From Stylophora pistillata (taxonomy: Eukaryota): 64,000 nucleotides of DNA. Shown piece by piece: positions 881 to 61,089 of the stretch. Position 1 is the stretch's first letter. The number at the start of each line of letters is the position of its first letter. The DNA lies in NCBI RefSeq assembly GCF_002571385.2, contig NW_019217796.1, positions 1,029,434 through 1,093,433 on the forward strand. The letters are read 5' to 3'. The translations under genes were made by a program, and so were the position numbers. Under the pieces are notes generated by a model. It searched no databases, was not told the DNA's origin, and saw nothing but the letters and a program-made list of their open reading frames with translations.

Positions 881-950
881 CGCTATTTAGGTTTCTGGCT
901 TGATACAACTGACTGATCAACCGGAAATTATTGTTTTCAAGTAAAATGTT

Positions 951-40251: not shown

Positions 40252-43200
40252 CTAATACATACAATCCTCCTCCAAGTTTGTGGCCAACTGATCGTTCGCA
40301 TTTGGCTCCGACCAAAAGTTCTCACCCGATGAACTAGCAATATGCAGGCTCATCTTGGCCACCACGTGAGTGATAACAATAGATACCAGGCTCCCATCGG
40401 CTCTTCCCAGATAAAGAGTGACCTCATACGAAGGATACTCGCAGTTCCCGTTTTGGCTCTCCCTGAGATTGGGAAGAAATTTTCCTTGATAATCAAATAC
40501 TTTAGTACGTTCCTCGCGAATGAGCTTTTTAGCGGCCTTTCTTCCGTTCGAATAGTAAACCTAAAGGAAAAAAAAAAGACATTTTAGCAAACGTAATAAA
40601 ATCAAAAACAGAAGGCATTATTTATTACATGAGATAAACGAGATGTTTATCTTTAAAAGTGTTCATATTGGTCGTTGTCGCACACTTTCTATAAGCGCTA
40701 ATACAACATAAAATAAAAGTGACACTGGGTGAACTTGCGGATATGCTGCGCTGAATATAATCACAGAATGCAGTGTTTGCACCAAAAGCCGCTGATCCTA
40801 TGATTCCAAGAGACAGAACCGAGCCAACATCCCCTCAATCAGTCGGCAATCATCAGTAAGATGCATGCTCCTCACAGACTTCTAAAGCCATGGTGGCAAA
40901 TTTACCATTTCAATTTTGTTGATATATCCAAATTATTTCGTTACTCCCACCGACGCAGCCCCAAGCAGTTTCTTTCGAAACTAACAGCCTTTATTCTAAA
41001 GCCGTGGTTTGTACATCGAATTCCCACATTACTCGTTCTTATGCTTCAGTATACACGCGTAAAAATGAACACAACTGCTTACCTTGGCGAGGCACAGACG
41101 AGTGACGAATATGTCATTGGACTCGTTGATTTCCAACAGAATGCCGCGTTTAATGAAATCCATCACTTTCAAGACTTCCTTGGAGTTGTTGTTGACAGCT
41201 TGTGGTAGCTCGATCTGTCTGGCAGTAGGAGGTCCGAACAGTCGACTCATCAAAGCCAACTCGAACTTTCGGGCTTCTATCATGTGATTTCCGTGGAATA
41301 TTCGGATGAACCGTTCACTTTCCGTCGGCTTAGTGTCAGTGGATAATACTTCAGAGCTCCCATAGAATACCCGGATGCGCAAAGCGGAATCTGAAAATAC
41401 AAATTGAACAATGGTTTTTAACTAACGGCAGGCACGGTACCCTTGTAATTACTCCTAACTGCATTTTAAGAACACTTGGGCAGACCTTTTACCAGATACA
41501 ATCTTTTGGATCGCATAAAGATAATATGATTATTTTACCCTGCCTGTGGCCTGGAGGGCAGATGAACAATATACTAATCGTGTGGTTAGAGACTTCACTT
41601 ACCACAGATATCTCCCGCTTGTTTCCCAGGCCTTGCGAACCCTGACCCTGGATTTTCATTTGATTGAGAGATGTTGGTGAGCTGGGAAAAGGGACGTAAT
41701 ACAGATATGAGCTTTTTTTGTAAGATGAATAAATATATCTTATTAACCAAGCGCGAGGGCCGTACTGGGAAAATATCGGCCCGAGGTCTTGACAGTACGG
41801 ACCGAGCGCAGCGAGGTCCGTACAAAAAAGAGCGAGGGTCGGTATTCTTCCAGTACGGTCCCGAGAAAGCTTGGTTAATAAGAGATTTATTATACGACTG
41901 AAGTTCAAAGGGACACAAGTGCGGTATCATTCGGGACCATTCGGGACAGTGCCCGGTCCAATACTTAGAGAATATTGGACCGGCAATAGAGCATTTTGAT
42001 TGGTTGATTTTAGTTATTGGCCCTCTGACTGCTCGAGTCGTGTAATAAAAATCTTTATAAGTGTGACAATTTACATACCATTCGGCCCATGCTCTCATCC
42101 TTATCCGAACAAGTTGGCTCTGCAAAGAAATTGTGTGGAAGGTCAGTTTCAATGATCGGTGCTGCGTAATTTAGCAGTCTTAATTCATCTACTGACACGT
42201 TACAGTGGGCGTACTACATCACGACCAGCTCCCAGTTGTCTTATTAGCTCAGCTGGTAGAGCGCTGCAACAGTATCGCAAAGGTCATGTGTTCAAATCGT
42301 AGTGTTCATTACTGCAAAGAGGCGCTAGTAAATTAGGGCCTCCTTGCAGGTTACCTTTGGCCTTTTGCTTGAGATATTTCTGATAATAATCTTACCTATT
42401 AAGTGTTTATCCAAATTGAAGTGAGTGCTGACAGACGATGATCCATCAGAAGACTAGAAACAAAAGTTGTGGCGTCAGAAACAACAGGTTCGAGCAAGAT
42501 TTAAGAAACAAGTGAGTGCTTTTAGCAAATGCAAAACAAATCTTCTTTCACTCTGTCTATCAGTCTGCTATAGTGAATACCAAAGAAAAAGACTGAACCT
42601 AAACAGTTACACCAAATGTACGTTTCAAAACAGGCTGATCATACCTGCAGCCAGAATTTCACAAGACTTGGATTGGTTGCCATGACATGCTGAAGAAATC
42701 CGTTTTCGTGAAATCCGTTTTCGTGAAATCCAACTTGGCCATTAGTTAAGCAAATGGCCTCCAAGATTTCCTTCCTGACGTTGTTGAAATCCAAACTCTC
42801 CAATCCAGGAGGGAGTTGCGCAGGTCTGATAAAGTTGTTACTTGCAAAATCTCCACCAAAAAAGGACTGGCCGTTGGAATAAGGAAATTGGAAAGGATTT
42901 GATGTTGGTTCGTCGGTGAGCATAGGTTCATAGCCATGGCTCGTTTATGGCGGAATTGTCTGAAAAATTCAATCAATACGGTCATTTGTCTGTCCCGTTC
43001 TTGATATGCTAAATAGCCAAGGTTCGCTATGCTAAGCTTTTGGGGCGTGATTGAAAATTGGATCGACAGCGTAACTTTCCAAGGGAAAAGTGAATAAAAA
43101 TTGCGAAAGGCAGTTTCTTTTTTAGGCTGTTACTAGTTTCGTGAACATTCCTCTTCCTCTTCATTAGTGCAATGACAGTAGAGGGAGAGCCTAGAAAGAG

Positions 43201-46200
43201 GGAGAGAGAGAGGGAGAGAGATAGGGAAAGCCGAGAGAGAGCCGAGGGAGAGCCGAGGGAGAGCCGAGAGAGAGGAAGAGAGAGAGACAGAGAGAGAGAC
43301 AGAGAGAGAAAGAGAGAGAGAGAGAGAGGGAGAGAGAGAGAGGGATAGGAAGAGGAGGAAAACTGTCTAAAGAACATGTGACTTATCTTTAATACGCCGA
43401 TAGATGATCTTTAAAGTAGAGTCTCCACGTCTCAAGTTTAAACATTTGTGTTTTGTTAGATTCTTATCCATATTACTAGTATATGTAGACTGTTAATTAG
43501 AATGGTATCTGAGCGAGTTGGTTATTCGACCAGTTTGTGTTTTTTTATAATCCAGTTGGGATGAAGCGTGTTAGGTTTACGCAAGAGAAAAGAAGTGAAA
43601 TCGACATATCTCGGATAACTTCTTGGTTCTTTCTCCCTGTCCCAATATCTTCTATTGGTTTTTAGTGAGGAGAGAGAAAAACGCGGCTGAGGTGGGGAAA
43701 ATGTTTAGGAGCAAAGTACGAGAGTGGAAGTCAATTCCACCCACCCTTAAAGGCAAGTTACACGCCACTCTCTCAGCNNNNNNNNNNNNNNNNNNNNNNN
43801 NNNNNNNNNNNNNNNNNNNNNNNNNNNNNNNNNNNNNNNNNNNNNNNNNNNNNNNNNNNNNNNNNNNNNNNNNNNNNNNNNNNNNNNNNNNNNNNNNNNN
43901 NNNNNNNNNNNNNNNNNNNNNNNNNNNNNNNNNNNNNNNNNNNNNNNNNNNNNNNNNNNNNNNNNNNNNNNNNNNNNNNNNNNNNNNNNNNNNNNNNNNN
44001 NNNNNNNNNNNNNNNNNNNNNNNNNNNNNNNNNNNNNNNNNNNNNNNCAGAGCGGACCTTTTTTTTTTTCTTTTAATCTGTTTTCTTTGTTTAATACCCG
44101 AGTCCTTCACAAATCAAATCGAACATTAATCCTCACCGGAGTAATACTATCTAAATCGTCCTCAAGTGAGCTGTCACTGCTATCGTGCGGAGAGTCTTGA
44201 AGCCGGCCATAACTCTGCGGTCCAGGAAAACTTGGATAGTTGTTGAAGAACACATTGTCTTTCGCTGACGGAAGTGTACGTATCACCGAGTCGCTCTTTC
44301 CACGGGACTAGAGATCAAACAAATAAAAATATAGTCTTTTTCAGTGCCTTAGGCCTAGTTTATAAGTCGCGCTACAGTCGAATTTAATTCAGACGAATTT
44401 AATTCCATTAAATTCGTCGTTCCGTCGACGTAATTCTTGGCGTGGTATTATGCGTCGAAATGAATACGATCGAAGATTTAATTCTCTTCCCAAATGCAGT
44501 GCCTCTGGTCAGAGGTGTCATTATGAAAAAAACATGGCGAGGGCTAAAGCTTTGAAAACAATTTTGCTCGAAAAAATCCACATCGCTCTGACAATCTTTG
44601 AGAAGCTTTTCTATACAAGGAGCACATTTGAGACAATACCCAACAAATTTATTTGGTTGCCAGCCGATAGCTTCTTTATTAACTTCAGGAATAGAACATT
44701 CCGATCGAACACAAACACTTTTACCACACGTTATACAAGAATACTTCATTTGTTTCTCACAATTACTGCAAGGAGATGAGAAACTTTTCGTCCAAAGCGC
44801 TAAAGCCGTAAACTACAACGTAAACTCGCGCGAGAAGTGCCCAAGACGAGCTTTAGCGCAAGCGGAATACTTGAAAAGGTCGCCACGGGTCACTGCGGGC
44901 TCGCCAAAATAAATTGAAATACATTAAGAAAATGTATGCATTTCATTCGATGCGACGTTAGTGCGACGTTAAAACTGAAGACGCGTTATCGATAATTTAT
45001 CCGTCTTATCCGTCTTACCAAGACGGATAAAACGTCAAGGACGAATTTAATTTACCAGACAAATTTAATTCGTTTTAGACGTCGCGCTATCGTCGAATTT
45101 AATTGCTTGTGGGACCTTGAATTAAATTCGACTGTAGCTCGACATATAAACTAGGCCTTACACTCTTGAAAAAACTAATTACATCTTCCGTTTCTCGACG
45201 AAGGGACTAAAACTTAACCATCATGCTCACTCTTGCTATACGTACAACAGTTTAATTTTGACATCGCTGATCCACCCAGCATGCAAGAAGAGTATCACAA
45301 ATGTACTTAATGGAGGCCTGGCTCATCAGCGAGTTATCAGTTCTCAGAGACATGCAGGGCCGTCGTGCTGCGAAAAGCGGAGGTCTGGGGCTTTATTATT
45401 TGTGAAAAACAAAAAGGATAATATATTTCTTACAATAAAATAATAAAAGATGTTAAACCTTTGTTGGAGAAACCGCATCCCCACGCGGAACAAAATGATG
45501 CATTGTCCTTACCATTGGGGGCTTGCCATTTTGATTCTCCTCTGCCCTCGGTGAACTGAAATTTTGTTGTCTTAGCGAGCAACCATCTGTAGAACACAAG
45601 AAAAAATGTTCACTGGAGAAATCATGGCTATCCATAGAGATACCAAAGCTGTAGCTTGTAATTGAGTTCCTTTTTTTTTTTTTTTTTTCACATGTATGAA
45701 ATGTGCAATGCAACTTCCCTCAATCGACTCCTTAATAAAAGGTCGAACTATCTTTCAACATATCCCTTTTGAGAGGAAGATGAATTGTCTTCCGCTTTGT
45801 AAAAAATCGTGTCAAATCTTATCAACTCTTCCTTAAAAGTGAACCAGGCGTCTCTCCTCATCACAGAAACGAAACACGGATTCAACAGCTGCAGTTGTCA
45901 GTTACCCCGAGTGACTGATCTAACTTTATTACATAAAAATCGAACGAAAAATTTCCAGCCTGCTCTGTTGCGCTAAGAGTAGATGCACTAGCTAGTAAAT
46001 GAAGGATAGTTCACATTTTTAGTGAAAAGATCTCAGAAAAGACAATGATATGTGCGATGTTTCTTGACGTTTCAAGCTTTCTTTATAAGCGAAAAATCAA
46101 TTAAGTGGTTTTCATTTCAAGTTTTTCAATTAGTAATGAAATATTTCATTAGGGCCGTTTATACTGGCGTGGATAAAAAATTCCGTGGCTTGCATAACCC

Positions 46201-49200
46201 GGGGCTGTGGAAGTGTACTGTTTATACAATGAGTTCGGTTCTAATACATGTCGCGGGTTATTTCCTTCTTATAAACTACCCCTGTTGATCTGTGTACGTA
46301 ATGAGTCTTGAGATAAGTCGAAGTAGTATGACCAATATAGTTCGTTTATTGAACTTGACTAAGTCCACTAAACTTTTGCCGCTAATAAATTAGATGAAAT
46401 AAATGAAAGGAGGAACAGATAGTCAAATAAAGTTGGTCAAGTTTATCAAACGTTCCTTTTTCTACTCATGCGATCAATAGGGAGCAATTTTAACAACAAG
46501 AATCACCACAAGCGTCAAGCGTTTTTTGTCTCAATTTTCCACGAAGTCCAGCTATTTCCTGGATTAAGTTTGTTTTTAATTTATAAGTTTTTCTTCTTTG
46601 TTTTCTCTTCGCGAAAGCATCACATGTCGACATTCCTATCTTAGCAGTGTGCAGAAAGTTTGTCAGGATGGATCTAGTTAAAGGATCGATCATGCCTCCA
46701 GTTTCCTCTAGCTCAGTGGTGGAGAGCACCTGAAATACTATTCGAAAGGTCGCGAGTCCGACTCCTATGCGAGTACACGGATTTTTTTTTTTTTTTTTTA
46801 GTATACCTGCGACATTCACTGAACAACATCATCTTTCACTTAAAACACCACCGTTTAAAATCCTTCATCTTCGTTCACACGATAGCGCAAAAACATGTAT
46901 AATTCCTTTTCACGATCGATAACAAAGACGATCTCCTCAACCGACAATTTTATTTCATTTATCAACTTTCAATGATCGTGAATATTCAGATCTCACGGCA
47001 AATTTGTCTCTCAGCGGGTCTTTCTTTGGGAAGTGGTGCCATGGAACGCTAAAGTTTGGCCGGGCTTCCCAAACTTAATTAAGTTTAATTATGCAGTATA
47101 TTTTGGCAAATAAGGAAATAAATACTTGTGTCTCCGAGGTGTGTCGTCAAATTATCGAATCGCCCTTCGCAGGCTTCACAATGGGTTTCATGAATAGTTG
47201 GCACAAAAAAGCTGAGCTCAATATTTTGTTTATCTTCCTATTCAAATTTCACAATAGTGTTACCAGATGAAACTGATAACGACGTTCTTGTCTTTCATCT
47301 TAAATCACTTAGTCACAACTTCCTTTCTCCCACGTGGTAATATTGGTGGTCGGTTACTTAACGGAAGTCTCTTTGTCTGAAAAGAACAGAAAAGTTGACC
47401 CCAAGTTTTTTTCTGGGGCAATGTGGCCTGAAAATTCAGCATAGCAAAGTCTCAATTCAAGAAGAGTTCGACCATTTTTATGTGCACAGGAAAAGAACAC
47501 TCGCTCAGATTTTAATGGAATATTAGCCATAAAGGTATAAAGTAACGATAAAATTTCTGTAGAGCCGCTGGCAAGTGACACAGTTCGCCGGTCTGCTTGA
47601 TAGCGTCAGGGTGTGTTCAGGGAGTGTCTGGGCGCAGTACTGAGATTTTTCCCTTCGCAGTCTACTTTCGATTTAGAATGCACAGCAAAATTAAGGTATA
47701 AGTTTGCTATAAAAAGAATAGACAAGAAGGGAACGAGAAAAAAAAAAACGGAAAAAAGAAAATCTATCTGACTAAAGATTTGATCGAAGAGGATCTTGCA
47801 CTAGTTTCAGTTTACACTGTAGTTTTTGTTTGAGGCCAACATTGGTCTTAACTAAGTTATGCTAACAAGGTCATCTTTGACTGATATTTTGATAAGCTTT
47901 TCAGGAAGGTGCGATCTAAAATTAGGGGCTGTGACGCGATTTTAATGTCTCCATAATGATATCCCAAATGATTTTATCTATCTGTCTTTTTGTCTTCTGA
48001 ACAAAGTGGAAGTGTACCTCCAATGCACTTTCACAAACAAATGACAAGGAATCAAATAATTTCATTCGATGTATGAAAAAATGTTTAGTATCGTATTTGT
48101 GTCAACACGAAGAAAAAGTTTCGAACGCTTTGCATTGAGTCCTTAAGTCAAAACGTGCAAAATAAAATTATCCGTGCGTCACCTCCAAAGAAGGTTCGAA
48201 CTTCGTAGATTTTCATACTATCTAAACAAGTGTTATCATGCTCCAGTTTCGTTTCAGTGGTTCAAACGTGGTTCGAAACGATCGACATCTCTGGGAAAAG
48301 AGAATACAAAGTCACGGAAACTCAAAACTTAAATTATGCAAAATTAAAATTTCACGCTATTCGACATTTTCGATTTAAGCGATACGCGAACCTTCGATGC
48401 CACTCAAAACGATATTTTTCCTGAAGTTTGTCGTTGTTTGCCGTAGCAAATTATAAGGCTGTGGCTACCAGAATTAACTTGTTTTGAAATTATTGTTTTA
48501 TCAAAAATAGGGAATTATTTTTAAACTGTTATGATGACGACTCGCTCGCAAATAAACCGGGAATCCCGACATTTTGTGATTTGTAAGCAATTCTTTCTGC
48601 GAAGTTCGTTTATTGATTTACAATCAATCTTGATGGAAGAAGCAACTTATTCCTGTTCTTACGGCCCAATTTTAACCAAATACCCGGGGGCCATGGTTGA
48701 TATCAATTGGTTTTTTTCGTTTTCTAGCACTTAACGCTCCTGCGACAAGATGACGTAAACTTCCTCGAAGTTTGATTGACAATACCTTGTGTGCGTTGAT
48801 AAAAACTTTTGTGTTCAGTAAAACCTTGATACATTTAGCCATCAAAATTTTGGTGAATAAATTGGAATAAGCCTAACCCAATATTTCTGGTGATCGACAC
48901 AAAACTACTTCAAAAGTCTACCCTTATTTTGTCTTTATTTTCCCTTTAATTCTCTGTTGTTGTTCGCCATGATTGGAATACAGCTATAAGTGTGAAAAAT
49001 TATCAAATTCAAATATCAGAGTGCCCTTCAGACAAGATAGTTTGCCCTCATTCCGCGTAAGACAAAGATCTCTAACTCAGTACTAGAACAGCAAGGCCGC
49101 ACCTGACTAAACACTAACAAGTTTTTTTACTTAGTTCTCGTTGAGTTAAGTTAAGGAATTCTGTTTTTACCACAACTTGAATACAGGTCGCACTCGAGTT

Positions 49201-49776
49201 GTTTGAACACAGGGTAACGTGCATGATGTCGGAAGACATCAGTGCAGTATTTAAATTGGCTACAATTTTTATTTCGCCTGTGCAAATAACTTTGATAGTC
49301 ATGGGTTATTTTTGCACTGACCGCGTGACTCAAATAACACATTCATGAACAAATCTGATTTAGTAGACTACGTTTCTCTTCTACTCGACTCGCGCCGTTC
49401 TTTCTCTTACCTTACACTTTTTTTCCTTACCTTTATCCTTGAAACGAAATACTCGGTAAGGTTCCTTTTCGTCCAAACTATGGGGAACTCTTACTTCTTC
49501 GACGTCTGGCATTTTGTGCAAGGCACATCGGAACCTTGTTTTCCACGTCGAGGGATCGGCAGATTCACCTGGGCGATATTTACCAGTATGCTCGGCCCAC
49601 AGCTTAAATAACATGGCATCTTTCTCAACAACAAAATCGGGTTTGCCAGCGTGTTTCCACGAGACTCGAAATTCTTTCTTTTCTTTATTGCGCCAACACA
49701 GTCCGGGCACTTTTCCGCTGTTTATTTTATCCTCTAACCAGGGTCGCAGTCGCTGCCGCTCTGTTGACAACGTCAT
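40252..49776 (-). CDS. IRF: Interferon regulatory factor, IRF4/8-like (DBD + IAD), 7 exons, about 533 codons with one in-frame TAA at codon 202
   Basis: Exons 49776-49431, 45586-45513, 44307-44137, 42959-42645, 41681-41603, 41390-41083, 40560-40252, all GT-AG and phase-compatible; five-Trp DBD (WKHAG, WAEHTG, WKTRFRCAL); IAD (LRIRVFYG..FGP..RGILLE..IFVTRLCLAKVYY..RTKVFDY). Middle exons 2-5 are less certain than the DBD and IAD exons. Confidence 0.88.
41733..42048 (+). mobile_element. 316-bp double-hairpin non-autonomous element (copy 1), IRF intron 4
   Basis: Near-identical to 56053-56368; internal 41869-41899 is the reverse complement of right end + left end. Confidence 0.88.
42220..42298 (+). 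mobile_element. tRNA-derived SINE head (same family as 2280-2567)
   Basis: A-box tagctcagctggtagagc then gctgcaacagtatcgca..ggtcatgtgttcaaatc; matches the right arm of the 2.3-kb palindrome. Confidence 0.65.
43180..43358. repeat. Imperfect (GA)n polypurine tract
   Basis: About 180 bp of gaga/ggga repeats in IRF intron 3. Confidence 0.9.
43778..44047. other. Assembly gap inside IRF intron 3
   Basis: Run of N. Confidence 0.98.
44352..45157. mobile_element. Non-autonomous PIF/Harbinger-like DNA transposon, IRF intron 2
   Basis: About 40-bp TIRs starting GGCC (ggcctagtttataagtcgcgctacagtcgaatttaattca, 2 mismatches); TTA on both flanks. Confidence 0.85.
46605..46880 (+). mobile_element. tRNA-derived SINE-like repeat, IRF intron 1
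   Basis: A-box tagctcagtggt at about 46709, B-box-like gagtccgactcc, T-run, then cattcactgaacaacatcatctttcac shared with 17597-18110. Confidence 0.65.
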
Positions 49777-49894
49777 GTCGCCCCCTTCAGTATCAGCACC
49801 GCTTTTCTTGAATCTACTTGCGAGGGAAATTCAAGTTGGGTCAGTTATGGATTCACAACAGGACTGTCTTCGAGAATACGCAAAGAGATGAGTT

Positions 49895-50393
49895 CTTTCG
49901 GTTTCTAACTTCCATGTGCTAATCGTAAAATACGATCGCAGCCAAACCCAATTCGTAATGTTGCCATTTTTAACCTGAAAAGTTCTGTTATTGAAGGGTT
50001 TTTCCCAGTAAATATATTCTTTATGTTCTTATTGGTCGAACCACTCAAGCGTGAGACTTCCTCTCCTTGAAATAACCACGTGTTGTATTCTATGCTAATT
50101 AGAGTTCCAATTTATTTTACTAAAAAAAAGCCTTTGGGCATAAAGACGGAAATGTTCCAAAGGAAGCTATCTTTTAAATTTGTACGGCTATGATACTAAA
50201 CACAGTCAAGATAAGCTGAATAGAAACGTAAGAAGGAAAGCGAATTAGTTAAGATGTACCGTCAAAATTCTGCTGGTCACACAACACAAACCTCCACATT
50301 CACACCCAATGTAGAAATTTGGAAATTGTTTATCATCAAAACCTGTCCTATTACAAATTGCATACGTCTCAAAACTCGTAAGTTTTCCCGGAA
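49895..50393 (-). promoter_or_regulatory. Putative IRF promoter motifs: ISRE-like, kB-like and GAS
   Basis: GAAACCGAAAG (49905-49895, minus), GGGAAAAACCC (50006-49996, minus), TTCCCGGAA (50385-50393); motif matches only. Confidence 0.45.
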
Positions 50394-51693: not shown

Positions 51694-52440
51694 NNNNNNN
51701 NNNNNNNNNNNNNNNNNNNNNNNNNNNNNNNNNNNNNNNNNNNNNNNNNNNNNNNNNNNNNNNNNNNNNNNNNNNNNNNNNNNNNNNNNNNNNNNNNNNN
51801 NNNNNNNNNNNNNNNNNNNNNNNNNNNNNNNNNNNNNNNNNNNNNNNNNNNNNNNNNNNNNNNNNNNNNNNNNNNNNNNNNNNNNNNNNNNNNNNNNNNN
51901 NNNNNNNNNNNNNNNNNNNNNNNNNNNNNNNNNNNNNNNNNNNNNNNNNNNNNNNNNNNNNNNNNNNNNNNNNNNNNNNNNNNNNNNNNNNNNNNNNNNN
52001 NNNNNNNNNNNNNNNNNNNNNNNNNNNNNNNNNNNNNNNNNNNNNNNNNNNNNNNNNNNNNNNNNNNNNNNNNNNNNNNNNNNNNNNNNNNNNNNNNNNN
52101 NNNNNNNNNNNNNNNNNNNNNNNNNNNNNNNNNNNNNNNNNNNNNNNNNNNNNNNNNNNNNNNNNNNNNNNNNNNNNNNNNNNNNNNNNNNNNNNNNNNN
52201 NNNNNNNNNNNNNNNNNNNNNNNNNNNNNNNNNNNNNNNNNNNNNNNNNNNNNNNNNNNNNNNNNNNNNNNNNNNNNNNNNNNNNNNNNNNNNNNNNNNN
52301 NNNNNNNNNNNNNNNNNNNNNNNNNNNNNNNNNNNNNNNNNNNNNNNNNNNNNNNNNNNNNNNNNNNNNNNNNNNNNNNNNNNNNNNNNNNNNNNNNNNN
52401 NNNNNNNNNNNNNNNNNNNNNNNNNNNNNNNNNNNNNNNN
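51694..52440. other. Assembly gap between DUSP22 and IRF
   Basis: Run of N; smaller gaps at 7486-7491 and 20879-20899. Confidence 0.98.
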
Positions 52441-53304
52441 GGGGAGGGAGGGGGAGGTACTATAAAAACATTGACTGCCAGTGAGAGGCATTATTATAAG
52501 ACTTCAGAGCCTTCAAGGAGGCAAACCACTGCTACAGAAAATTTTCTTCTCCTCGTTTTATAATCAGTTTAATGTGTTATTTAATAGCACACGTTTCTTT
52601 ACAAAAATATAATCTCAAATATTAAACTCATTACAACGGCGCCTTATCGCTGCTCAAATGAACCCGTGTTGAGTCCCGTGAAACTGCAATTCTTACAGTA
52701 TTATGGTATGAAGAAGTCTGTCTTGGTTCATAAAATAACTTAGATAGTACGAGCGCTTTGACTGGTCAAAAACCTATCGTTTATTGCATCGGTAAACCCG
52801 TAGAAAATAAAATATTGTTTTTAATTTATTTCCCTGAAAGCAGTAAACCACACTTTCTATCGGTTTACCAGCGCAATAACCCACTTGAGAAGTTGGGAGG
52901 AATGGAGAAAAGTTTGTAAACCACTTCCCTCTGCCTTGTGATCTACAAACTTATCAAGTGTTCTCCTCTCATCCCGCGAGGGCTTTTACGCCGGTGAACA
53001 GATCGAAAATGCTTCAATAAAAAAATGCTTAATTAGCAACAAAACGAACATTTGAGACTAAGTTAAACCAAAAGGGTGGGAATTGGATTAAAATTGATGT
53101 ATAACTACCATTTGTTATTATTCTTGTTCCAATTCATCTAATTAGGAAAGTTTAAATTGGAAAATAACAAGCCGTTAAAAAGACAGACAGGAACTGAGGT
53201 CAATCGTTTTGATACTGTTATTATTTACGTTTCATATCCGTACAAGCAACAAACTCTATTGTATTTACAAGGAAAATACGATATAAATAAACTACCAAAA
53301 CATT

Positions 53305-56300
53305 TTAATTCTCTACAGCTGTATTCGGTGAGGTTTCCTCGCCTATTGAATCAATTGTTTCCTCGTTTTCCTTGTCGTATGATTGGATTTTAGTCCTCTG
53401 TGTATGTCTACATAAAGCGTCCATAACATCATCCGCGCGATCCTCTAAATCATCGTTGTTCATACTGTTCGCCATAATCTCTCGGAGATATTTCTCGTCA
53501 TCGAATTTTGAGTTAGGAAACTCTCTTTTTAATCTTTCACGTTCCTGATGTGAGGAATATAAAGTTTCATGGACGACTCAGAAAGCGAAATAACCACTTC
53601 CTTCTAAAGTTTCCCTTTCGACAGGGGAAGCTGTGAGCGCGGAGCGAGGCTCCCAAGTTTCCAAGTCCCCCTCTCCCCACCCCCGATCAAGAGCTGTGTT
53701 TAATTGTTTTCCTTCGAGTTCAACTCTTAGATAACACTTTTGCAAGTGGGGGGGGGGTGTCTTAAAATTTGGGTTCTATCTAAAATTTATGATCAAATAT
53801 TGAAGGGACAATGTCTCGGTTAGGCAGGAACAGATATGCCCACCACTCTTGTGATTATTTTGGTACCGTCTACCATTTTCATTATCCTTTGCAAATAGCC
53901 TGCGAAACAAGCCCTGGGGGAGGGGAGGGGGGATTGGGGCGAGCGGAACATTCCGCTCCCCCCAATCCCCCTCCTTTCCCCCAGGGCTTGGTTCGCAGGC
54001 TATCTGCAAACAGAGACTAGTACCTAACACAGGAAAGGAAAAAAATTAATATTGGGTAACCGAAATCTTCCAGGAAGAAACACTGGACAAGAAGTGCTGG
54101 TTGAATAGCAGCGACTAACATTAAAAGTCGGTTATACAGAACTGCCTAGAGTCAAACACTAAACTTAGCATGAACTAAATTTTCTAATTCTAGTTTATCT
54201 AATATAAAGTACGATACACGACTCGTTTCTAATTGAAAATTAGTGGCTTTTACAAATTGTGTATTACCTGAGGTGCCTGTAAGTTGCAGAAATCTTGTAG
54301 TTGTCTTTTAAATCCGTAATTTGGGTTGGCTATAGATCGTGCACATTTAATGGCTTCAAGAGCCTCTCTCCAATCAAGCTGAGTCACAACCATGATATAC
54401 GCTGCTACAAGTGATGTTGAACGAGACACTCCCGCCATACTTGAGAAAAAAAAAAACAACAACAACAGACAAGGGATGAAAATAAACTAGGAAAAAAAAT
54501 TCAGATGAACATGCCACATGTCTGAAGAATCTACAGCTATAGTTTACGACTACAAGCAACTTGGATAGCACAACTCTTTTATGCAGTCAAACCCTCTATA
54601 CGAGACCACTCAGAAAATCAAGTCTTCAACAACAGCCCCCTCCCTACTTGGGCAACGTTTGATAATCCCGGCAGAGATAGTCTCCTTGTCAGCCCTTGTT
54701 TATGAGTGGATCAGAAATTGCCCGCCACTGTCTCAACCAATCAAATACAAAACATATACCAATCGCTTCTTGGTCACCCGTGTTTTCCCGCGCTTCAGAC
54801 GGTTTTTTTTTTTTTTTTTTTTTTTTTATTCTGAGTTCTCATTGGCTCCATGTGATATTTCCTTTCTTCTGATTGGCTGTTGTGATTACTCTGGTTGTAG
54901 TTTTACGACACTCACTCGAGAGGCGCGCACATGATCGAACGTCCCTCAAAGTCAGTTACTAACGTACCTCACTCGTTTTGTTTTGCAAACACTTTTCTTA
55001 AAAAAAAAAAAAAAATCAATATTTGGTTTCTTTCTCAATAATACGTCATCATTTATTTTGGTTTTCTAAGATTAATATATATGCTTCGAAAATCATGTTA
55101 ATAATAACAGTAATAATGATACAAAGCCATTTAAGGCTTAACATCTTAAGCTTTAAATTCTCTGTCGTTCAAGTTGCCATCTTAGATATGTTCGAATATT
55201 CATTTGACATTCTCAAAGCAACTTCCTTAGTAAATTGTATACGTTGCATTTTCATTATGGAACTGTGGAAATCATTAGTCGTCTTACCAATGAACTAAGC
55301 ATACTCCATCGTTTAACCTGAAATTAAAATTGAAATTTGTTTACAAATAATTACAACTAACAACGCAGCTCACAGATTTATAATGTACATCATATTTTTT
55401 ATTTTTACTTCAGAATTATGTATGCAAATTTGCCTGAGCTGAAGGAAAATAAAATAAAACGGGTTTAAAATCAGTTTAACCCAAATTCATTTTAATCCAA
55501 CAACAACACATCCACACACCCACTAATAAGTGATGGTGATACGTGATCCGGAGGCTATGTTGGCACTTATAATTATATTTTACAAGAAGCAGTCAGCCAG
55601 CACTACTGTTGACAGAAAAGGTTCCTATAAAAATCATTTACCTGCAGTTGTGAATAAAATCGATGCTCTCCTTGAAGTAAACTGATCTGAAAGTTTGCAA
55701 AAGATTGTGCAAGTGTTGTTATTCCAAACACTAATCTGGCAACCACCATCTATGGTTGCACTTTATTGACAATTAAGCCTAAAATGTATTTTTGCTGCAC
55801 ATCTCAGAAATAAAAGTATACGCCTTCATGATAACACCTCGTGCAATTGTAAAGAGCTCTGATGACATTATTAAATAAGCATAACTCTAAATTTAGTTCT
55901 GCAACAACTGCATATACTCAAAGTCAAGATTAACCCACGGATCATCACAATCATTCATTTGACATACATCTGTACCATTGCCTGCGCATTTAAACTTGAA
56001 TTATTTTTCATAGTATCTTTTTCCACAACCATCGCTTGAAGCAGTTTTTTTCATATATCTTATTAACCAAGCGCGAGGGTCGTACTGGGAGAATATCGGC
56101 CTGAGGTCTTGACAGTACGGACTGAGCGCAGCGAGGTCTGTACAAAAAAGACCGAGGGCCGATATTCTTCCAGTACGGTCCCGAGCAAGCTTGGTTATTA
56201 AGAGATTTATTATACGACTGAAGTTCAAAGGGACACAAGTGCGGTATCATTTGGGACCATTCGGGGCAGTGCCCGGTCCAATACTTAGAGAATATTGGAC

Positions 56301-59300
56301 CGGCAGTAGAGCATTTTGATTGGTTGATTTTAGTTATTGGCCCTCTGACAGCCCGAGTCGTGTAATAATTACAATTATTGGACGATGTAACCTACATTTC
56401 TTGATCAGGAGAATCAGCGGCGTGAAAATACTTGTAAATTAGATTCTGAAAGAGTAAAAAAAATAAGCTTAAAGTGCACCTAAACCCCAAAATGTTTTTC
56501 ACTTAACGAAACAAGCGTATTTTTTGGAGTATTTCTGTGCAAAAATTTGTTTATTTGCTCAAATCTTCAATTTTCTGTGCCCAGTCAAAATACGGAAAAT
56601 CGGCCGCCATTTTCCCCTACGACGGAGTTTAAAGAGGAATGGCCCTAGCGGATAATGTGACGTCAAATCGAGAACACGAAAGTCTGCATTTCACACATTT
56701 TCACTTGTTTGGGAAGGTTGTAGTCGATATTGTCCGAAAATATGCCGACTAAGTGTGTTGTAGAAGGATGTAGCAACGTGCCAAATTTGCAAGAGGGTAT
56801 CGTGCTTCATACATTCCTCATACAACACACCTAGTCGGCATATTTCAGACAATATCGACGACAACCTTCCCAAACAAGTGAAAATGTGTGAAATGCAGAC
56901 TTTCGTGTTCTCGATTTGACGTCACATTACCCGCTACAGCCATTCCTCTTTAAACTCGGTCGTGGGGCAAGATGACGGTCGATTTTCTGTATTTTGACTG
57001 GGCACAGAAAATTAAATATTTGAGCAAATTGAAAATTTTTTGCACAGAAATACTCTGAAAACTAAGCTTATTTCGTTAAGCAAAAAAAAAAATTGGGGGT
57101 TTAGGTGCACTTTAATCTAGGGCTCTCAAATCCATTGCGAGTCTCAATGTGTTCAACCTAGATGTATCTACAACTCTTAGGCTCTTTTAGGGAGGCTGCA
57201 TAATGCATCAAAACATGAAACTACTCTGTTGAAAACTGAGTGATATTTTAGAAACTAAAAAACTTGGTGTGCAGCCTGGAGTGAAGTTAAAAATTCCTTT
57301 CACAGGCTCTTTAGAACATCATTAAAAGTTAAATAGCCCTATGCCATTTATTTTGTTTAGGTTGGGAGGTTTTTTTTTTTTTTTTAGATTATGCTATGCA
57401 ATCCAATCTTAGATATAATCACACTATCACTTAACAGCACTCAAGCCTTGTAGAATTAACTCAAAATGCATTTGTTCGAAAAGTTAAAAACAAATGCGAG
57501 TCAGTGAAATGAATGTATATTTTTACATCAAAGTAAAATACCTCATCTTGTGCTTGTGTACTATCATGAATGGACAGAACATGCGTTATTTTATTCTTTG
57601 CTAACTGTTCCTTGTCTTTGGCATCTGAAAGAATACATTAGAATACATTACAATACAGTCAGTTGTTAGGTCCATTGGGTAATTTTGGTTTTATCAACTG
57701 ACTTGATAATGTAAATTGGCCACTGTAGAGAGTTTCAAAGCTGACATTTTGAGCGTTAGCCCTTTGGCTATATCAACTCAGTTGATAAAACCACAGTTAC
57801 CTTGTTATTCTCCTCCACCAACACAGCACCACTGCAGTTTCTTTAGTAACTTACCCCCTTTTATTTTTTAGGTCAATTGATGGCGCACTGGGGTGGTGGG
57901 TTTGAGTCCCAGACAGGACCATCATTCTGATTTCTGATAAAGAACTAAAAATAATCTGCTGTCTTTTTGTTGACATCTGCAAATGATCAAAACTCATAGA
58001 TGAAAGCAATAACCCATGAGCCCTGTCTGTAGCATCTTGACTGAAAATTAGTTGGTGGGGGATGTTAAAAAATCCATTCAAACATTTTATACAAAGAGTA
58101 AGGCACAGAGCTGCAAGTATTGTGGTTTGGCCTTGCTTCAATGGTAGGTTCTTGATATAAGATAGAGTAACATTGCATCTTGCCCTCAAGAAAAATCACC
58201 AACGACCACTGACAATAAGAAGAATTGGATGGATCATGGTGGAAGAGAGGGGGCTGGGGGGGATATGGAGCATGTAAGGTATGAGGTTGAACTGTCAAGC
58301 AGGGCTAGAAAGATTTTAAGCTAATAATATTTCAGATTTTATTAAAGTACCAACCCAGGTTTCTCTAAATAATAGCTATATAATCAAAAAGATATTTTAA
58401 GTAAACTAAATATAAAAATTAAATGATCTCTAGAGAGGGTAAACATGAAATAGCTTTTAGAGTCTGTAATTCTCTTTTCAAAATAACTGCAGTTTTTAAT
58501 AACAATGTTAGATCACAAGGACATGTATGCTGCAGGGACCATCAACAAAAAGTGTGCATACCTGAACTTATACCCAAAATTTACATCAACCCATGAAGTA
58601 GTTAGAATTCAAAATACCTATATAAGATAATGAATTAAAAAATAATTAACTAGTAAATAAAATAATTGAAGTCATACCTCTGATATTGCCTAAATAAAGT
58701 CCAGGAAGGACCTGTTTGAAACAAAATGAAGTTAACTCCTTTCATTCCCAGAAGTGATGAATATGTAACTTCTCCCTATAATATCCATACATTATCCACC
58801 AAACAGGTAGTGAGAATACTCAAACTTATCCGGTAGAATTTGTTATCTTGATCTAACACCAAATTCTCATCACTAATTTACAAGGAAATGCGTAGCAAAC
58901 AGAGAAGAGAATTTATATTAGATGTTAGGAGTTTTAGGGTTAAATTCAAAGGGGGAACTGTGCAAGTAGCCATGAAATTTTTTACAGAGCAAGTATAATG
59001 CATGAACATAAACAGTCCATGTATTATTTTCACAAGTACATATGAAAGTGAAGATTATAGGCTAGGTAAATTAGATTTACTTTTACATGTTTAAGTGCCA
59101 AACGCTTTGTGTGCGTGCGTGTGTATCTGCAAGGGGTTAAGAGTCCATTAAAGGGCTTTTGAAAAAAATTTGCGTCCCAATACCATCTAAGCATCAATAG
59201 TATGTGATTTTTTGCCAAAGTTGGCTGTATGCTACAGGATTTTCTCATGATCTTTAACAAATTCTAATCAGTCTGTCAATAGATGGTTCCCAGCTATACT

Positions 59301-61089
59301 GAACTGCAGAGGGTTGGTGGATATATGTAACTAGCTAGGTTATGTATGCAGCTACAGGTTTATGTAAAATAAACAACAAACACACACACCAAAAAATCAA
59401 GATATCAAGGTTGAGAAAAGGACAATCACATTACTTTTGGAGGGCATATAGTTTTGTCAGTTAGAAAAGCGAGTGAGTTCGGTTAAGGAGAAACTACAAA
59501 GTCAACAACACAACATGGTCAGTCCAAAAGCACATGGTTTAATGAAAAGCGGGGGGTCCGAGCCCCCCTGAAACTACCTTAGACTTCAGTCCATGACGTT
59601 ACAAAAACGACAATGAGGTTCTAATTACAATGTGTCTGAAGCCTTATCTTATAGTGTAAAAAACGTGCAAACTGTCACTTTGTCTAGCTTCAAGAATCAA
59701 GTGCTAAATCTGACTTTCTACTAGTTTGTTTACGGTACAAGTTATTAGCGATTTATTCTTGAGTCAATTAGTTTTCTAATTTGTTCAATTTCCTGGTGGG
59801 AGGGTAACCTGCTAGGTGAAGCTGACTCAGGGAAACTAGCTCACAGTCTTAAGGATACTACAAGGGACACAAATAAACTATGTGCCTGACAAAAATCATG
59901 TGATTGTTTTTATATTATCAATACACAAGGCTAAATCATACAAATTCATTGATGAAAATCAGAATCAGGGTGGCAAATGCCATTTACAGCTTGCACTTTG
60001 ATGTTTGGCCTGTGAAAAGGAGTCTTTTAGAGAGGGCAATTTGTCATTTGGCCAGATGTAGTGGTAACAGTAGGTAATAACATAATTTTTTTTATCTACA
60101 TTATTACAGTGGAGTAGACAGTAGACATCTGCATTGGATCACAAGCTGCACTTTCCATCAATATTTTGGTAAGTTGCAAAATCCACAACTGTAGTTGATA
60201 AATATATATTTCTCTCTTCGAACCATTTATTATTCGTTTTATGCTTTTAAAAAATTGTCTCCTCTCTTAATTTTCAACATTTTTTCGGCCCTGATCTTGT
60301 CTCACCACTAAGGGTATACATGTATTCTGTGTTGACTTCATTTTAAAGCAGAAAAATAAAAAGCAACTCTCGACACCAAATTCCTAATCGCGTATCTCGA
60401 ACGTTCACGTATACACCAGCGCGCCTTGCCGGCTAGCCAGCTTTCCCTAACTAGCTAGCCTCCCTTGGCGAGTTTACCTCCCCAAGCGAACTAGCCTCCC
60501 CTTGCGAGCTAACCTTCCCTACTGAGCTTGCCTCCCCATGGCTGTGAGCTAGCTTTCCTGAGTCAGCGTCACCTAGTGAGCTTGCCTCCCGCTAGCAATT
60601 TGAACAAATTGAAAGACTAATTGACTCAAGAATAAATCGGTAATCACTTGTACCAACCTCTTGCTCGTAAATGATATATTGGAGATTCATCTAAGCGACA
60701 CTAAACCCAGTCATGCAACATACATCCGTTACTTAAGACCCGATCTGCTTATTTGATGAATTTAAGTACTCAGAGCTGAAATCATGACTGTTTGCCTTAA
60801 TTAGATAACAAAAACATCACATCCAGTCTTTGAAAGACAAGTGTATCAAGGATTCTAAAATGCAATTAAATCAAACATTTTTAAACTACTTTGTTGACTA
60901 CCCAATCTATATTAGAAGCTAAGAACACAGATCCATGCAGCGATCGACAGCTTTCTGGAATAAATTCCGCAATCCATCCATACCAAAGGTTCGGAAGATG
61001 TTATCCTTCGATGTGTTGCTGCTAGACACAAGAATATTACAAAAAAGAAACTAACACAAATTTTTTACCTTGTTCATTCCATTCCCCAT
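53305..61089 (-). CDS. DUSP22: Dual-specificity phosphatase DUSP22/DUSP15-like, 224 aa, 8 exons
   Basis: Exons 61089-61069, 58711-58678, 57624-57542, 56445-56396, 55686-55642, 55317-55288, 54439-54268, 53544-53305; MGNGMNKVLPGLYLGN.., AADSP acid loop, catalytic VHCMAGVSRS, ANPNYGF..QLQ; Gly2 myristoylation-type start. Confidence 0.93.
53896..54002. mobile_element. TA-flanked GC-rich hairpin MITE
   Basis: tagcctgcgaa..caagccctggggga / tcccccagggcttggttcgcaggcta. Confidence 0.8.
56053..56368 (+). mobile_element. 316-bp double-hairpin non-autonomous element (copy 2), DUSP intron 4
   Basis: Near-identical to 41733-42048, same orientation and length. Confidence 0.88.
56473..57111. mobile_element. 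Kolobok-like fold-back MITE containing the start of a THAP-domain ORF
   Basis: TTAA flanks (56469-56472, 57112-57115); AG...CT termini; about 300-bp inverted arms; ATG at 56742 gives MPTKCVVEGCSNVPNLQEGIVLHTF. Confidence 0.85.
57677..57860. mobile_element. Penelope/retrozyme-type repeat fragment with internal inversion
   Basis: ggttttatcaact...agttgataaaacc inverted pair; minus strand aagggctaacgctcaaaatgtcagc; shares sequence with 21623-21725. Confidence 0.5.
58732..58943. mobile_element. TTAA-flanked (piggyBac-like) MITE, DUSP intron 1
   Basis: ttaactcctttcattccca ... taggagttttagggttaa. Confidence 0.6.
60430..60596. repeat. Degenerate short tandem repeat (gagctagcctcccc-type units of about 20 bp)
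   Basis: About 7-8 imperfect copies of (g/a)ctagcctcccc / cttgcctcccc. Confidence 0.6.

What the first reader, a model, noticed from the sequence alone, without database searches (positions are those of the whole stretch)
40252..61089. DUSP22 directly upstream of an IRF4/8-like gene: candidate cnidarian-human microsynteny
Seen: a DUSP22-like gene (starts MGNGMNK, like human DUSP22) and an IRF with DBD+IAD are adjacent on the same strand, phosphatase first, about 3.5 kb from DUSP stop to IRF ATG. Established: human 6p25.3 has DUSP22 then IRF4 in the same order and orientation. Inference: the pair may predate the cnidarian-bilaterian split, possibly held together by IRF enhancers inside DUSP introns, which would also help assign orthology of this IRF to the IRF4/8/9/10 group.
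Basis: partly seen in the sequence, partly recalled or inferred. Interest (0 to 1): 0.75.

Follow-up and report, generated by a model that had tools for sequence, protein, structure and literature searches.

The report
Coral DUSP-IRF gene pair, ancient neighbours
In this stony coral a small phosphatase gene sits directly in front of an immune gene-switch (IRF) gene, as in other corals, a sea anemone and vertebrates, so the two genes have probably been neighbours since before these animals diverged.

Summary
On the minus strand of this Stylophora pistillata window, an 8-exon DUSP15/22-type phosphatase gene (61089-53305, 224 codons) is followed by a 9-exon IRF gene with DNA-binding and IAD domains (49776-40252, 584 codons). 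DNA contigs of two independent runs bridge the 747-N gap between them, with 26 letters between the flanks. The join is therefore real, hides no gene, and the true stop-to-ATG distance is about 2.8 kb. The 270-N gap lies in IRF intron 3.

The same order and strand appear on contigs of two other unnamed corals. Consecutive accession numbers or locus tags, and shared scaffolds, point to the same adjacency in Nematostella, Oculina, Acropora and Porites.

In vertebrates, DUSP22-IRF4 and DUSP15-IRF10 were published in 2006, and DUSP22A shares a chromosome with IRF8. An inherited, pre-bilaterian linkage is likely.

- Sequence does not place the IRF in the IRF4/8/9/10 group.
- No conserved non-coding block lies in the DUSP introns that could be compared; only the IRF's own proximal promoter is conserved.

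The assembly also has an in-frame TAA in IRF exon 4.

The parts
53305..61089 (-). DUSP15/22-type atypical dual-specificity phosphatase gene. It has 8 coding exons: 61089-61069, 58711-58678, 57624-57542, 56445-56396, 55686-55642, 55317-55288, 54439-54268 and 53544-53305 (stop included). That is 224 codons, equal to XP_022802500.1.
   Evidence: Pfam DSPc scores 47.1 bits on exon 7. The catalytic motif VHC|MAGVSRS is split over exons 6 and 7. An RNA contig and 16 read pairs show the exon 7/8 joint at 53543/54267.
52570..53304 (-). DUSP 3' UTR. The RNA contig ends near 52570.
   Evidence: table 8: X15 record 11 covers 52570-53543 and is joined to 54267-54439. X21 raw-read depth is 38-57 over 52666-53226 and falls to 4.7 in bin 52479-52665.
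51694..52440 (.). Assembly gap of 747 N between the two genes. Its length is overestimated; the flanks are continuous.
   Evidence: tables 5, 5c and 8: X1 record 6 (2870 letters) and X2 record 18 (1138 letters) lie on both sides with 26 letters between.
49777..50100 (-). IRF proximal promoter and 5' UTR. This is the only conserved non-coding block of the locus. It holds invariant CACGTG, GCGGAAGT, CCAAT, GGGAAAAACCC and GAAA(G/C)CGAAAGA motifs.
   Evidence: 8 coral sequences, mean column identity 78%. The RNA contig reaches 49948.
40252..49776 (-). IRF gene coding region. It has 9 exons: 49776-49431 (DBD), 45586-45459, 44307-44137, 42959-42645, 42453-42396, 42119-42079, 41681-41603, 41390-41083 (IAD) and 40560-40252 (IAD plus stop). 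That is 584 codons.
   Evidence: The RNA loose end at 49431 leads into exon 2. Pfam on P0405 gives IRF 124.4 bits and IRF-3 64.4 bits.
43778..44047 (.). Assembly gap of 270 N inside IRF intron 3.
   Evidence: All P0405 residues are accounted for on either side. The gap was not tested with reads.
42945..42947 (-). In-frame TAA in IRF exon 4 of this assembly. The transcript-derived protein has Tyr at this position.

Best explanation
This is an inherited, very old gene neighbourhood. The single DUSP15/22-type phosphatase gene of the coral lies head-to-tail in front of the coral's only detectable IAD-bearing IRF gene.

Shown:
- Both genes are expressed as separate transcripts from the minus strand. 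About 1.9 kb of real DNA lies between the DUSP poly(A) region and the IRF start region.
- The same arrangement occurs in other hexacorals.

Inferred:
- The cnidarian-bilaterian ancestor already had DUSP15/22 directly upstream of an IAD-type IRF.
- The two vertebrate genome duplications copied the pair, giving DUSP22-IRF4, DUSP15-IRF10 and DUSP22A-IRF8.
- The coral IRF is then the positional counterpart of the IRF4/8/9/10 group, even though its sequence does not say so.

Why the pair stays together is not shown. My split is:
- about 45%: selection against breaks between the DUSP 3' end and the IRF control region (cis-regulatory constraint, of which enhancers inside DUSP are one form);
- about 35%: neutral survival of a very compact pair;
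- about 10%: functional co-regulation;
- about 10%: independent origin.
For: Coral locus:
- The adjacency and the real join are shown.
- The own genome has one DUSP15/22-type gene (the next best match is 47% identical).
- It has 5 IRF DNA-binding domains, of which only this one gives a PF10401 (IAD) match.

Direct DNA in other corals:
- L003/L004 hold DUSP exons at 719-3555 and then the IRF DBD at 6329-6670 on the same strand.
- L002 holds the DUSP last exon at 560-787 and then the IRF DBD at 5170-5508.
- 0 of 5 loci of IRF paralogues with at least 3 kb upstream hold a DUSP.

Record numbering and shared scaffolds (unless stated):
- Nematostella: EDO34919 (IRF) and EDO34920 (DUSP), both on the 417,570-base scaffold.
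- Oculina: locus tags G012527 (DUSP) and G012528 (IRF).
- Acropora muricata: XP_067053551 (IRF) and XP_067053553 (DUSP).
- Acropora palmata: XP_074617026 (IRF) and XP_074617028 (DUSP).
- Acropora cervicornis: both genes on the 2,699,576-base scaffold.
- Porites evermanni: both genes on the 839,514-base scaffold.
- Two unnamed anemone-like assemblies hold both genes on contigs of 1,258,774 and 540,832 bases.

Orthology:
- The Nematostella neighbour (full form P0463) falls in the same IRF clade as the window's gene (17 rows, SH-aLRT 98).
- The DUSP tree shows three vertebrate clades, DUSP15, DUSP22A and DUSP22/22B. The cnidarian clade lies outside them.

Vertebrates:
- PMC1634998 (passages) reports DUSP22-IRF4 and DUSP15-IRF10, and a dusp gene in the IRF8 region of zebrafish and Xenopus.
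- DUSP22A and IRF8 share a chromosome in Osmerus and Thalassophryne.
Against: - No invertebrate bilaterian, medusozoan, octocoral, sponge or placozoan locus could be inspected.
- For named species other than this coral, adjacency rests on accession order and equal scaffold lengths, not on coordinates.
- In Acropora the accession-adjacent IRF is a short 232-276 aa copy. The 554-aa copy has distant accession numbers.
- L006 has 3.6 kb upstream of the orthologous IRF and shows no DUSP.
- No Fox gene lies on this scaffold: 0 of 43 forkhead matches are on C13. The wider vertebrate paralogon is therefore not seen here.
- Sequence gives no IRF4-group signal.
- Two random gene orders are expected to share a few adjacent pairs by chance, and the scan could pick such a pair.
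- DUSP introns 4-7 and the spacer hold no conserved non-coding block.
- The two genes differ about 20-fold in RNA depth in one sample, with no read-through.
Confidence: 0.65

Rival explanations
1. Genomic regulatory block. Enhancers of the IRF lie inside DUSP introns, so the phosphatase is a bystander that cannot be moved away.
For: - The pair is retained over very long times in two lineages (PMC1634998).
- The IRF is a transcription factor and the DUSP is an unrelated enzyme with 7 introns. This is the layout described for such blocks in PMC3514665 (passages).
- Introns 1-3 (61068-56446) had no comparator and remain untested.
Against: - blastn of 61300-49400 against 9 coral contigs found, outside exons, only the IRF proximal promoter (50100-49777) and one reversed repeat. 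That promoter hit shows the method can see non-coding conservation at this distance.
- All DUSP introns are short, 0.3-2.4 kb. Bystander genes typically have long introns (PMC3514665).
Confidence: 0.2
2. Neutral survival. The pair is ancestral but under no selection to stay together. It persists because the free spacer is only about 1.5-2 kb and so is a tiny target for breakpoints.
For: - The true spacer is short.
- There is no conserved element outside the promoter.
- Expression levels differ about 20-fold and there is no read-through.
- The wider Fox-cluster linkage is not kept on this scaffold.
Against: - In vertebrates the spacer is tens of kilobases (recalled, no call), yet the pair persisted in up to three paralogous regions.
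- Survival in both hexacorals and vertebrates would need luck on two long branches.
Confidence: 0.3
3. Independent origin. The adjacency arose separately in hexacorals and in early vertebrates, and the match is a coincidence picked out by a scan of many windows.
For: - No invertebrate bilaterian evidence was obtained.
- The IRF cannot be shown by sequence to be the IRF4-group orthologue.
- A few shared adjacencies are expected by chance between any two gene orders (general reasoning, no call).
Against: - Both partners are the matching family members: the single DUSP15/22 pro-orthologue and the single IAD-type IRF.
- The coral and the two other coral contigs show DUSP first on the same strand. 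Human DUSP22-IRF4 has the same order and strand (recalled, no call).
- With 5 IRFs and one DUSP15/22 among roughly 25,000 genes, chance adjacency is of the order of 1 in 2,500 per genome. This is my estimate; the gene number is recalled.
Confidence: 0.12

Closest known systems
Vertebrate Fox-cluster paralogons: DUSP22-IRF4 (human 6p25.3), DUSP15-IRF10 (20q11 region), and IRF8 region with a dusp gene in fish and frog (Wotton & Shimeld 2006, PMC1634998; Huang et al. 2010, PMC2885996 figure legend)
   Same: A DUSP15/22-family phosphatase lies next to an IAD-bearing IRF. Several copies in vertebrates show that the pair predates the vertebrate genome duplications (passages). The DUSP tree gives three vertebrate clades that fit three such regions.
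   Different: The coral has one compact pair with a spacer of about 2.8 kb. No Fox, EXOC2 or MYLK gene was seen beside it: there is no forkhead match on the scaffold, and intronless GPCR genes flank it in the window. The published work, in the passages I read, does not look at invertebrates for this pair.
Conserved ancient microsyntenic pairs / genomic regulatory blocks (Irimia et al. 2012, PMC3514665)
   Same: A transcription-factor gene is kept next to an unrelated gene across phyla.
   Different: The predicted conserved intronic elements were not found in the part I could compare.
Human DUSP22 (JSP-1/JKAP) and DUSP15 (VHY), N-myristoylated atypical phosphatases
   Same: The N-terminus is MGNGMNK. 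The HCxxGxxRS loop and the AADSP acid loop are present, and there is no extra domain. The best solved relatives are DUSP15 (63.7 bits) and DUSP22 (60.4 bits), against 34.5 bits for the next DUSP.
   Different: The coral protein sits outside all three vertebrate clades and has its own acidic 80-residue tail. Myristoylation is recalled from the literature and was not tested.
Nematostella 'nvIRF5', the only Nematostella IRF with an IAD1 domain (Margolis et al., bioRxiv 10.1101/2021.05.13.443009, figure S3 legend)
   Same: Probably the orthologue. The Nematostella neighbour of DUSP (P0463, 574 aa) has IRF plus IAD and groups with the window's IRF.
   Different: I could not confirm that P0463 is the protein that paper calls nvIRF5. 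Its knock-down had no measurable effect on the cGAMP response there (passage).

Membership tests
DUSP15/22 subfamily of atypical dual-specificity phosphatases | DSPc catalytic domain with an HCxxGxxRS loop and an upstream acid Asp | tested here: met
   Pfam PF00782 scores 47.1 bits on exon 7 alone. VHC|MAGVSRS is read across the exon 6/7 split codon. HAADSPDQE lies in exon 4.
DUSP15/22 subfamily of atypical dual-specificity phosphatases | Closest to DUSP15 and DUSP22 rather than to other DUSPs | tested here: met
   PDB scores are DUSP15 63.7 bits, DUSP22 60.4 bits and the next best (DUSP5) 34.5 bits. The 120 best listed hits of P0185 that carry a descriptive name are called DUSP22, DUSP22-A/B or DUSP15; others are unnamed or labelled hypothetical or unnamed protein.
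DUSP15/22 subfamily of atypical dual-specificity phosphatases | N-terminal MGNGM myristoylation signal | tested here: inconclusive
   The sequence MGNGMNK is present. That it is myristoylated is recalled for the human proteins and was not tested.
Orthologue of DUSP22 specifically | Groups with vertebrate DUSP22 to the exclusion of DUSP15 | tested here: not met
   The cnidarian clade (SH-aLRT 99) lies outside the vertebrate DUSP15, DUSP22-A and DUSP22/22-B clades (quick tree, 42 rows). The gene is therefore co-orthologous to all three.
IRF family | DNA-binding domain with five spaced tryptophans | tested here: met
   PF00605 scores 128.2 bits. W13, W28, W40, W60 and W78 are invariant or nearly so in 29 sequences.
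IAD1-bearing IRFs (vertebrate IRF3-10 type) | C-terminal IRF association domain (PF10401) | tested here: met
   Exon 8 scores 35.1 bits and exon 9 scores 24.8 bits. P0405 as a whole scores 64.4 bits against a cut-off of 27. In this assembly the reading frame between DBD and IAD holds a TAA.
IRF4/8/9/10 group | Sequence groups with IRF4/8/9/10 rather than with IRF1/2 or IRF3/5/6/7 | tested here: inconclusive
   The DBD scores 125.8 bits against IRF4 and 124.9 against IRF2. The IAD matches only the IRF5 IAD, at 27.1 bits. In the tree, cnidarian IRFs form their own clade beside vertebrate IRF4/8/9. No vertebrate IRF1/2/3/5/6/7 sequences were available, so the tree cannot decide.
Ancient conserved microsyntenic pair | Adjacency of orthologous genes in at least two distant phyla | tested here: met
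   Coral DNA shows it. Anemone evidence comes from accession order and a shared scaffold. Vertebrate evidence comes from PMC1634998.
Ancient conserved microsyntenic pair | Presence in intermediate lineages (invertebrate bilaterians, other cnidarian classes) | not testable with these tools
No fused DUSP+IRF gene model was found among 14 long proteins checked, out of the 150 best hits. The one mollusc comparison involved an IRF1-like gene on another chromosome.
Genomic regulatory block | Conserved non-coding elements of the target gene inside the bystander's introns | tested here: not met
   None was found in DUSP introns 4-7 or the spacer against L003 and L002. The IRF promoter was detected as a positive control. 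Introns 1-3 were not testable.

The most novel reading that the evidence does not exclude
The DUSP15/22-IRF pair is a relic of the cnidarian-bilaterian ancestor's genome. That ancestor had a single IAD-type IRF directly behind DUSP15/22. Vertebrate IRF4, IRF8 and IRF10 (with DUSP22, DUSP22A and DUSP15) are its positional descendants, and IRF3/5/6/7 are copies that moved away. On this reading, gene position settles a deep IRF family history that sequence trees cannot. The unbroken linkage would also reflect a functional tie, either shared control DNA or the phosphatase acting in the IRF's pathway, in an animal without interferon.
Probability: 0.3. Interest if true: 0.65.

Novelty: new member of a known kind. 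Interest (0 to 1): 0.45.

Why it matters
IRF trees do not resolve how cnidarian IRFs relate to the vertebrate subfamilies. NCBI calls members of this one coral orthogroup IRF2-like, IRF4, IRF4-like, IRF9-like or 'uncharacterized'.

A conserved neighbour gives an independent, positional anchor. It suggests that the IRF4/8/10 loci keep the ancestral site of the IAD-type IRF.

It also offers a compact, roughly 20-kb locus in a coral and a sea anemone where one can test experimentally whether an immune transcription factor and a JNK/STAT-pathway phosphatase share regulation. Here the spacer is about 2 kb, against tens of kilobases in vertebrates (the vertebrate figure is recalled, no call).

The vertebrate side has been known since 2006. 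In six searches I found no paper giving the cnidarian side. Supplementary tables of microsynteny surveys, which I could not open, may list it.

Tried and rejected
Fused gene models. I looked for DUSP+IRF fusions as a proxy for adjacency in other species. Of the 150 best hits of the HMMER search, I Pfam-scanned the 14 longest candidates. None of the 14 has an IRF domain.

Wider paralogon. There are 43 forkhead matches in the genome and none on scaffold C13. The window's other genes are intronless GPCRs.

Classifying the IAD. Exon 8 alone against solved structures gave only IRF5, at E 0.053. The whole database protein gave IRF5 at 27.1 bits and no IRF3, IRF4 or IRF9 IAD.

IRF tree (quick method, SH-aLRT only, 50 rows). 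It lacks vertebrate IRF1/2/3/5/6/7, because my three word searches returned none. A Stylophora IRF1-like row on a very long branch fell inside the cnidarian clade. I therefore use the tree only for the hexacoral orthogroup.

Contig-length fingerprints. Many DUSP and IRF fragments have different 'longest contig' values. Only the longest contig is shown for each protein, so these non-matches say nothing.

Metagenome loci. The DUSP is found in 3 of 37 loci (L002, L003, L004). L003 and L004 look like one contig filed twice. A 26.9-bit hit on the opposite strand of L012 is taken as chance.

Orthologous IRF loci. There are 9 such loci (L001-L009). The three with more than 5 kb upstream have the DUSP. 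The six with 1.0-3.6 kb upstream do not, including L006 with 3.6 kb.

Joined models. I did not send a joined spliced model of either gene to any search. Exons were searched apart, and whole proteins were taken from the databases (P0185, P0405, P0274).

Supplementary files of papers were not opened.

Full report
WHAT IS THERE

The window is from the stony coral Stylophora pistillata. The phosphatase exons are identical to XP_022802500.1 'dual specificity protein phosphatase 22-like [Stylophora pistillata]' (P0185, 224 aa). The window lies at C13:1029434-1093433 of a 397.6-Mb assembly. Both genes of the finding are on the minus strand.

The phosphatase gene starts at 61089. Exon 1 encodes MGNGMNK and is followed directly by GT. 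It has eight exons with canonical splice sites that sum to 672 nt. The catalytic loop VHC/MAGVSRS is read across a split codon between exons 6 and 7. The stop is at 53307-53305.

The IRF gene starts at 49776. Its whole DNA-binding domain lies in exon 1 (Pfam IRF 128.2 bits; five conserved tryptophans). Eight further exons end at 40252. The nine exons sum to 1752 nt, exactly the 584 residues of the transcript-derived protein P0405. P0405 matches the window at 98-100% per exon and carries IRF (124.4 bits) and IAD/IRF-3 (64.4 bits) domains.

THE GAPS

I tested the gap between the genes with reads, as the scan's note asked. One DNA contig from each of two samples of a 2024 study lies on both flanks of 51694-52440, with only 26 letters in between (X1 record 6, 2870 letters; X2 record 18, 1138 letters, tables 5, 5c, 8). 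Other runs listed date from 2016. The join is therefore real and nothing is hidden. The stop-to-ATG distance is about 2.8 kb, not the 3528 nt of the assembly.

The second gap (43778-44047) lies in IRF intron 3. The residues of P0405 continue without loss from exon 3 to exon 4.

EXPRESSION

- A poly(A) RNA contig joins DUSP exon 7 to exon 8 (joint 53543/54267, GT..AG on the minus strand) and runs through a 3' UTR to about 52570.
- Raw stranded reads agree, with 16 pairs at the joint.
- An RNA contig covers IRF exon 1 from 49948 and continues into exon 2.
- Raw reads show zero depth over 50048-52478, so there is no read-through. DUSP depth is about 20 times IRF depth in that sample.
- About 1.9 kb of real DNA thus separates the DUSP 3' end from the IRF start region.

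WHAT THE TWO PROTEINS ARE

The phosphatase belongs to the DUSP15/22 subfamily. Solved relatives score DUSP15 63.7 bits and DUSP22 60.4 bits, and the next DUSP 34.5. Those of the 120 best listed relatives of P0185 that carry a descriptive name are called DUSP22, 22-A, 22-B or DUSP15; others are unnamed or labelled hypothetical. It is the only such gene in the genome.

In a 42-row tree, vertebrates form three clades: DUSP15 (support 100), DUSP22-A (99) and DUSP22/22-B (96). Invertebrate bilaterians and cnidarians (99) fall outside them. The coral gene is therefore co-orthologous to all three, not to DUSP22 alone.

The IRF is one of five in the genome and the only one with a detectable IAD exon. 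The PF10401 scan gave 1 match, though this is a lower bound because the scan works exon by exon. That fits the statement that only one of five Nematostella IRFs has an IAD1 (bioRxiv 10.1101/2021.05.13.443009, figure legend read).

Sequence does not place the IRF in the IRF4/8/9/10 group:
- The DBD ties between IRF4 (125.8 bits) and IRF2 (124.9).
- The IAD matches only the IRF5 IAD (27.1 bits).
- In a 50-row tree the cnidarian IRFs group together beside vertebrate IRF4/8/9. I had no vertebrate IRF1/2/3/5/6/7 sequences, so the tree cannot decide.
- NCBI names for members of this orthogroup range over IRF2-like, IRF4, IRF4-like, IRF9-like and 'uncharacterized'.

IS THE NEIGHBOURHOOD CONSERVED?

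(a) Direct DNA. A scan of JGI metagenome contigs with an IRF DBD alignment gave 37 loci.
- Nine loci carry the orthologous IRF (93-94% DBD identity).
- The three with more than 5 kb upstream hold DUSP exons on the same strand. L003/L004 are probably one contig filed twice, with DUSP exons at 719-3555 and the IRF at 6329. L002 has the DUSP last exon at 560-787 and the IRF at 5170.
- Their IRFs are P0406-like and P0402-like, which makes two other scleractinians that I cannot name.
- The six loci with 1.0-3.6 kb upstream show no DUSP. Five of these are too short to reach it if the spacing is as in the window; L006 (3.6 kb) is not.
- Five loci of IRF paralogues with at least 3 kb upstream show none.

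(b) Record numbering.
- Nematostella: EDO34919 (IRF fragment, same 90% cluster as the 574-aa P0463) and EDO34920 (DUSP), both on a 417,570-base scaffold and both on the 16,139,615-base chromosome.
- Oculina patagonica: locus tags ACROYT_G012527 (DUSP) and G012528 (IRF).
- Acropora muricata: XP_067053551 (IRF) and XP_067053553 (DUSP).
- Acropora palmata: XP_074617026 (IRF) and XP_074617028 (DUSP).
- Acropora cervicornis: KAK2559750 (IRF) and KAK2559755 (DUSP) on one 2,699,576-base scaffold.
- That consecutive numbers mean neighbouring genes is my knowledge of how such records are numbered, not a coordinate.
- In Acropora the accession-adjacent IRF is a short copy. The 554-aa copy is numbered far away.

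(c) Equal scaffold lengths.
- Porites evermanni: DUSP and the 557-aa IRF both on 839,514 bases.
- Two unnamed assemblies whose IRFs are closest to sea anemones: both genes on 1,258,774 and on 540,832 bases.

The Nematostella protein falls in the same clade as the window's IRF (17 rows, SH-aLRT 98). The pair is therefore conserved at least across hexacorals.

THE VERTEBRATE SIDE

This part is already in print. Wotton & Shimeld 2006 (PMC1634998, passages read) describe four paralogous regions: DUSP22-IRF4-FOXQ1/F2/C1, DUSP15-IRF10-FOXS1, IRF8-FOXF1/C2/L1 (with a dusp gene in zebrafish and Xenopus), and IRF9. Huang et al. 2010 list DUSP15 in the IRF10 locus (PMC2885996, figure legend), as does PMC5281639 (one passage).

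My lists add that DUSP22-A and IRF8 share a chromosome in Osmerus mordax and Thalassophryne amazonica. The three vertebrate DUSP clades fit three DUSP-IRF regions, so the pair predates the vertebrate duplications.

In the passages I saw, the 2006 paper does not examine invertebrates for this pair. Six searches found no paper giving the cnidarian linkage. The main text of Irimia et al. 2012 has no DUSP or IRF, and its supplementary lists were closed.

WHY THEY STAY TOGETHER

I compared 61300-49400 with nine coral contigs. Outside exons, the only conserved stretch is 50100-49777, just upstream of the IRF ATG. It is 71-74% identical in seven of the contigs, which shows the method can see non-coding conservation at this distance. 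In an 8-sequence alignment it holds invariant CACGTG, GCGGAAGT, CCAAT, GGGAAAAACCC and GAAA(G/C)CGAAAGA motifs.

DUSP introns 4-7 and the rest of the spacer hold nothing conserved. Introns 1-3 had no comparator. The intron-enhancer idea is thus not supported where it could be tested, and all DUSP introns are short.

I rate some form of cis-regulatory constraint on the DUSP-3'/IRF-5' junction as the most likely reason for retention (about 45%). Neutral survival of a compact pair comes next (about 35%). Neither is shown.

LIMITS

- No invertebrate bilaterian, octocoral, medusozoan or sponge locus was seen.
- No Fox gene lies on this scaffold (0 of 43 matches).
- The assembly has an in-frame TAA in IRF exon 4 (42947-42945) where P0405 has Tyr. 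Exon 4 is 315 nt and in phase 0 at both ends. Whether the TAA is an allele, an error or bypassed by skipping is open.

VERDICT

- The ancient-linkage reading is likely (0.65) but not proven.
- The IRF4/8 label and the intron-enhancer mechanism are not supported.
- Novelty: a new member of a known kind, namely an ancient microsyntenic pair whose vertebrate half is published.
- Interest: 0.45.

Noticed in passing
window 42945-42947 (exon 4, 42959-42645), minus strand: There is an in-frame TAA in the IRF exon between the DBD and the IAD. The transcript-derived protein P0405 has Tyr there and differs from the window at about 8 other residues, so it comes from another individual or lineage. The exon is 315 nt and symmetric, so skipping it would keep the frame. 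The same point is noted by s1-786339.
   Followed up: partly
window 49890-50085, minus strand: The IRF promoter and 5' UTR hold an E-box, an ETS site, a CCAAT box, a kB-like GGGAAAAACCC and an ISRE-like GAAAGCGAAAG. All are invariant in 8 coral sequences. The ISRE-like site lies inside the RNA contig, downstream of the likely start. The set resembles the NF-kB/IRF/CCAAT module reported for coral STING genes in note s1-791463. It suggests that IRFs and NF-kB switch this IRF on.
   Followed up: partly
window 51694-52440: The 747-N gap stands for only 26 letters in contigs of two runs. Gap lengths in this assembly can be large overestimates.
   Followed up: yes
window 41700-42170 and 56011-56391 (minus strand); also 53788-54161: The same repeat-like open frame (about 125 aa) sits in an intron of each gene. 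Separately, 53788-54161 in DUSP intron 7 reaches word depths of about 11,000 in a DNA run, against about 150 beside it. Both are probably dispersed repeats.
   Followed up: no
window 45459-45586, minus strand: IRF exon 2 has a second possible GT donor after ...CCAATG near 45510. P0405 uses the longer exon, to 45459. This may be alternative splicing in the linker.
   Followed up: no
window 50425-50969: Two weak RNA-library contigs (depth about 3) lie in the spacer between the genes. Raw reads of another RNA run show zero there. They could be a rare transcript or DNA carry-over.
   Followed up: no
window 954-2108 (-), 21933-22829 (-), 36455-37540 (+): Three long intronless open frames look like seven-helix receptors. 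One lies 2.7 kb beyond the IRF stop, on the other strand.
   Followed up: no
proteins P0481, P0478, P0482 (Acropora): Acropora seems to have duplicated this IRF. The A. cervicornis model of 777 aa has two DBD stretches. Short 232-276 aa copies are numbered next to the DUSP, while the 554-aa copy is numbered far away.
   Followed up: no
proteins: Teleost DUSP22-A forms its own clade, with a platypus '22-A-like' protein. It shares a chromosome with IRF8 in two fishes. It may be a third DUSP copy from the vertebrate genome duplications, lost in most mammals.
   Followed up: partly
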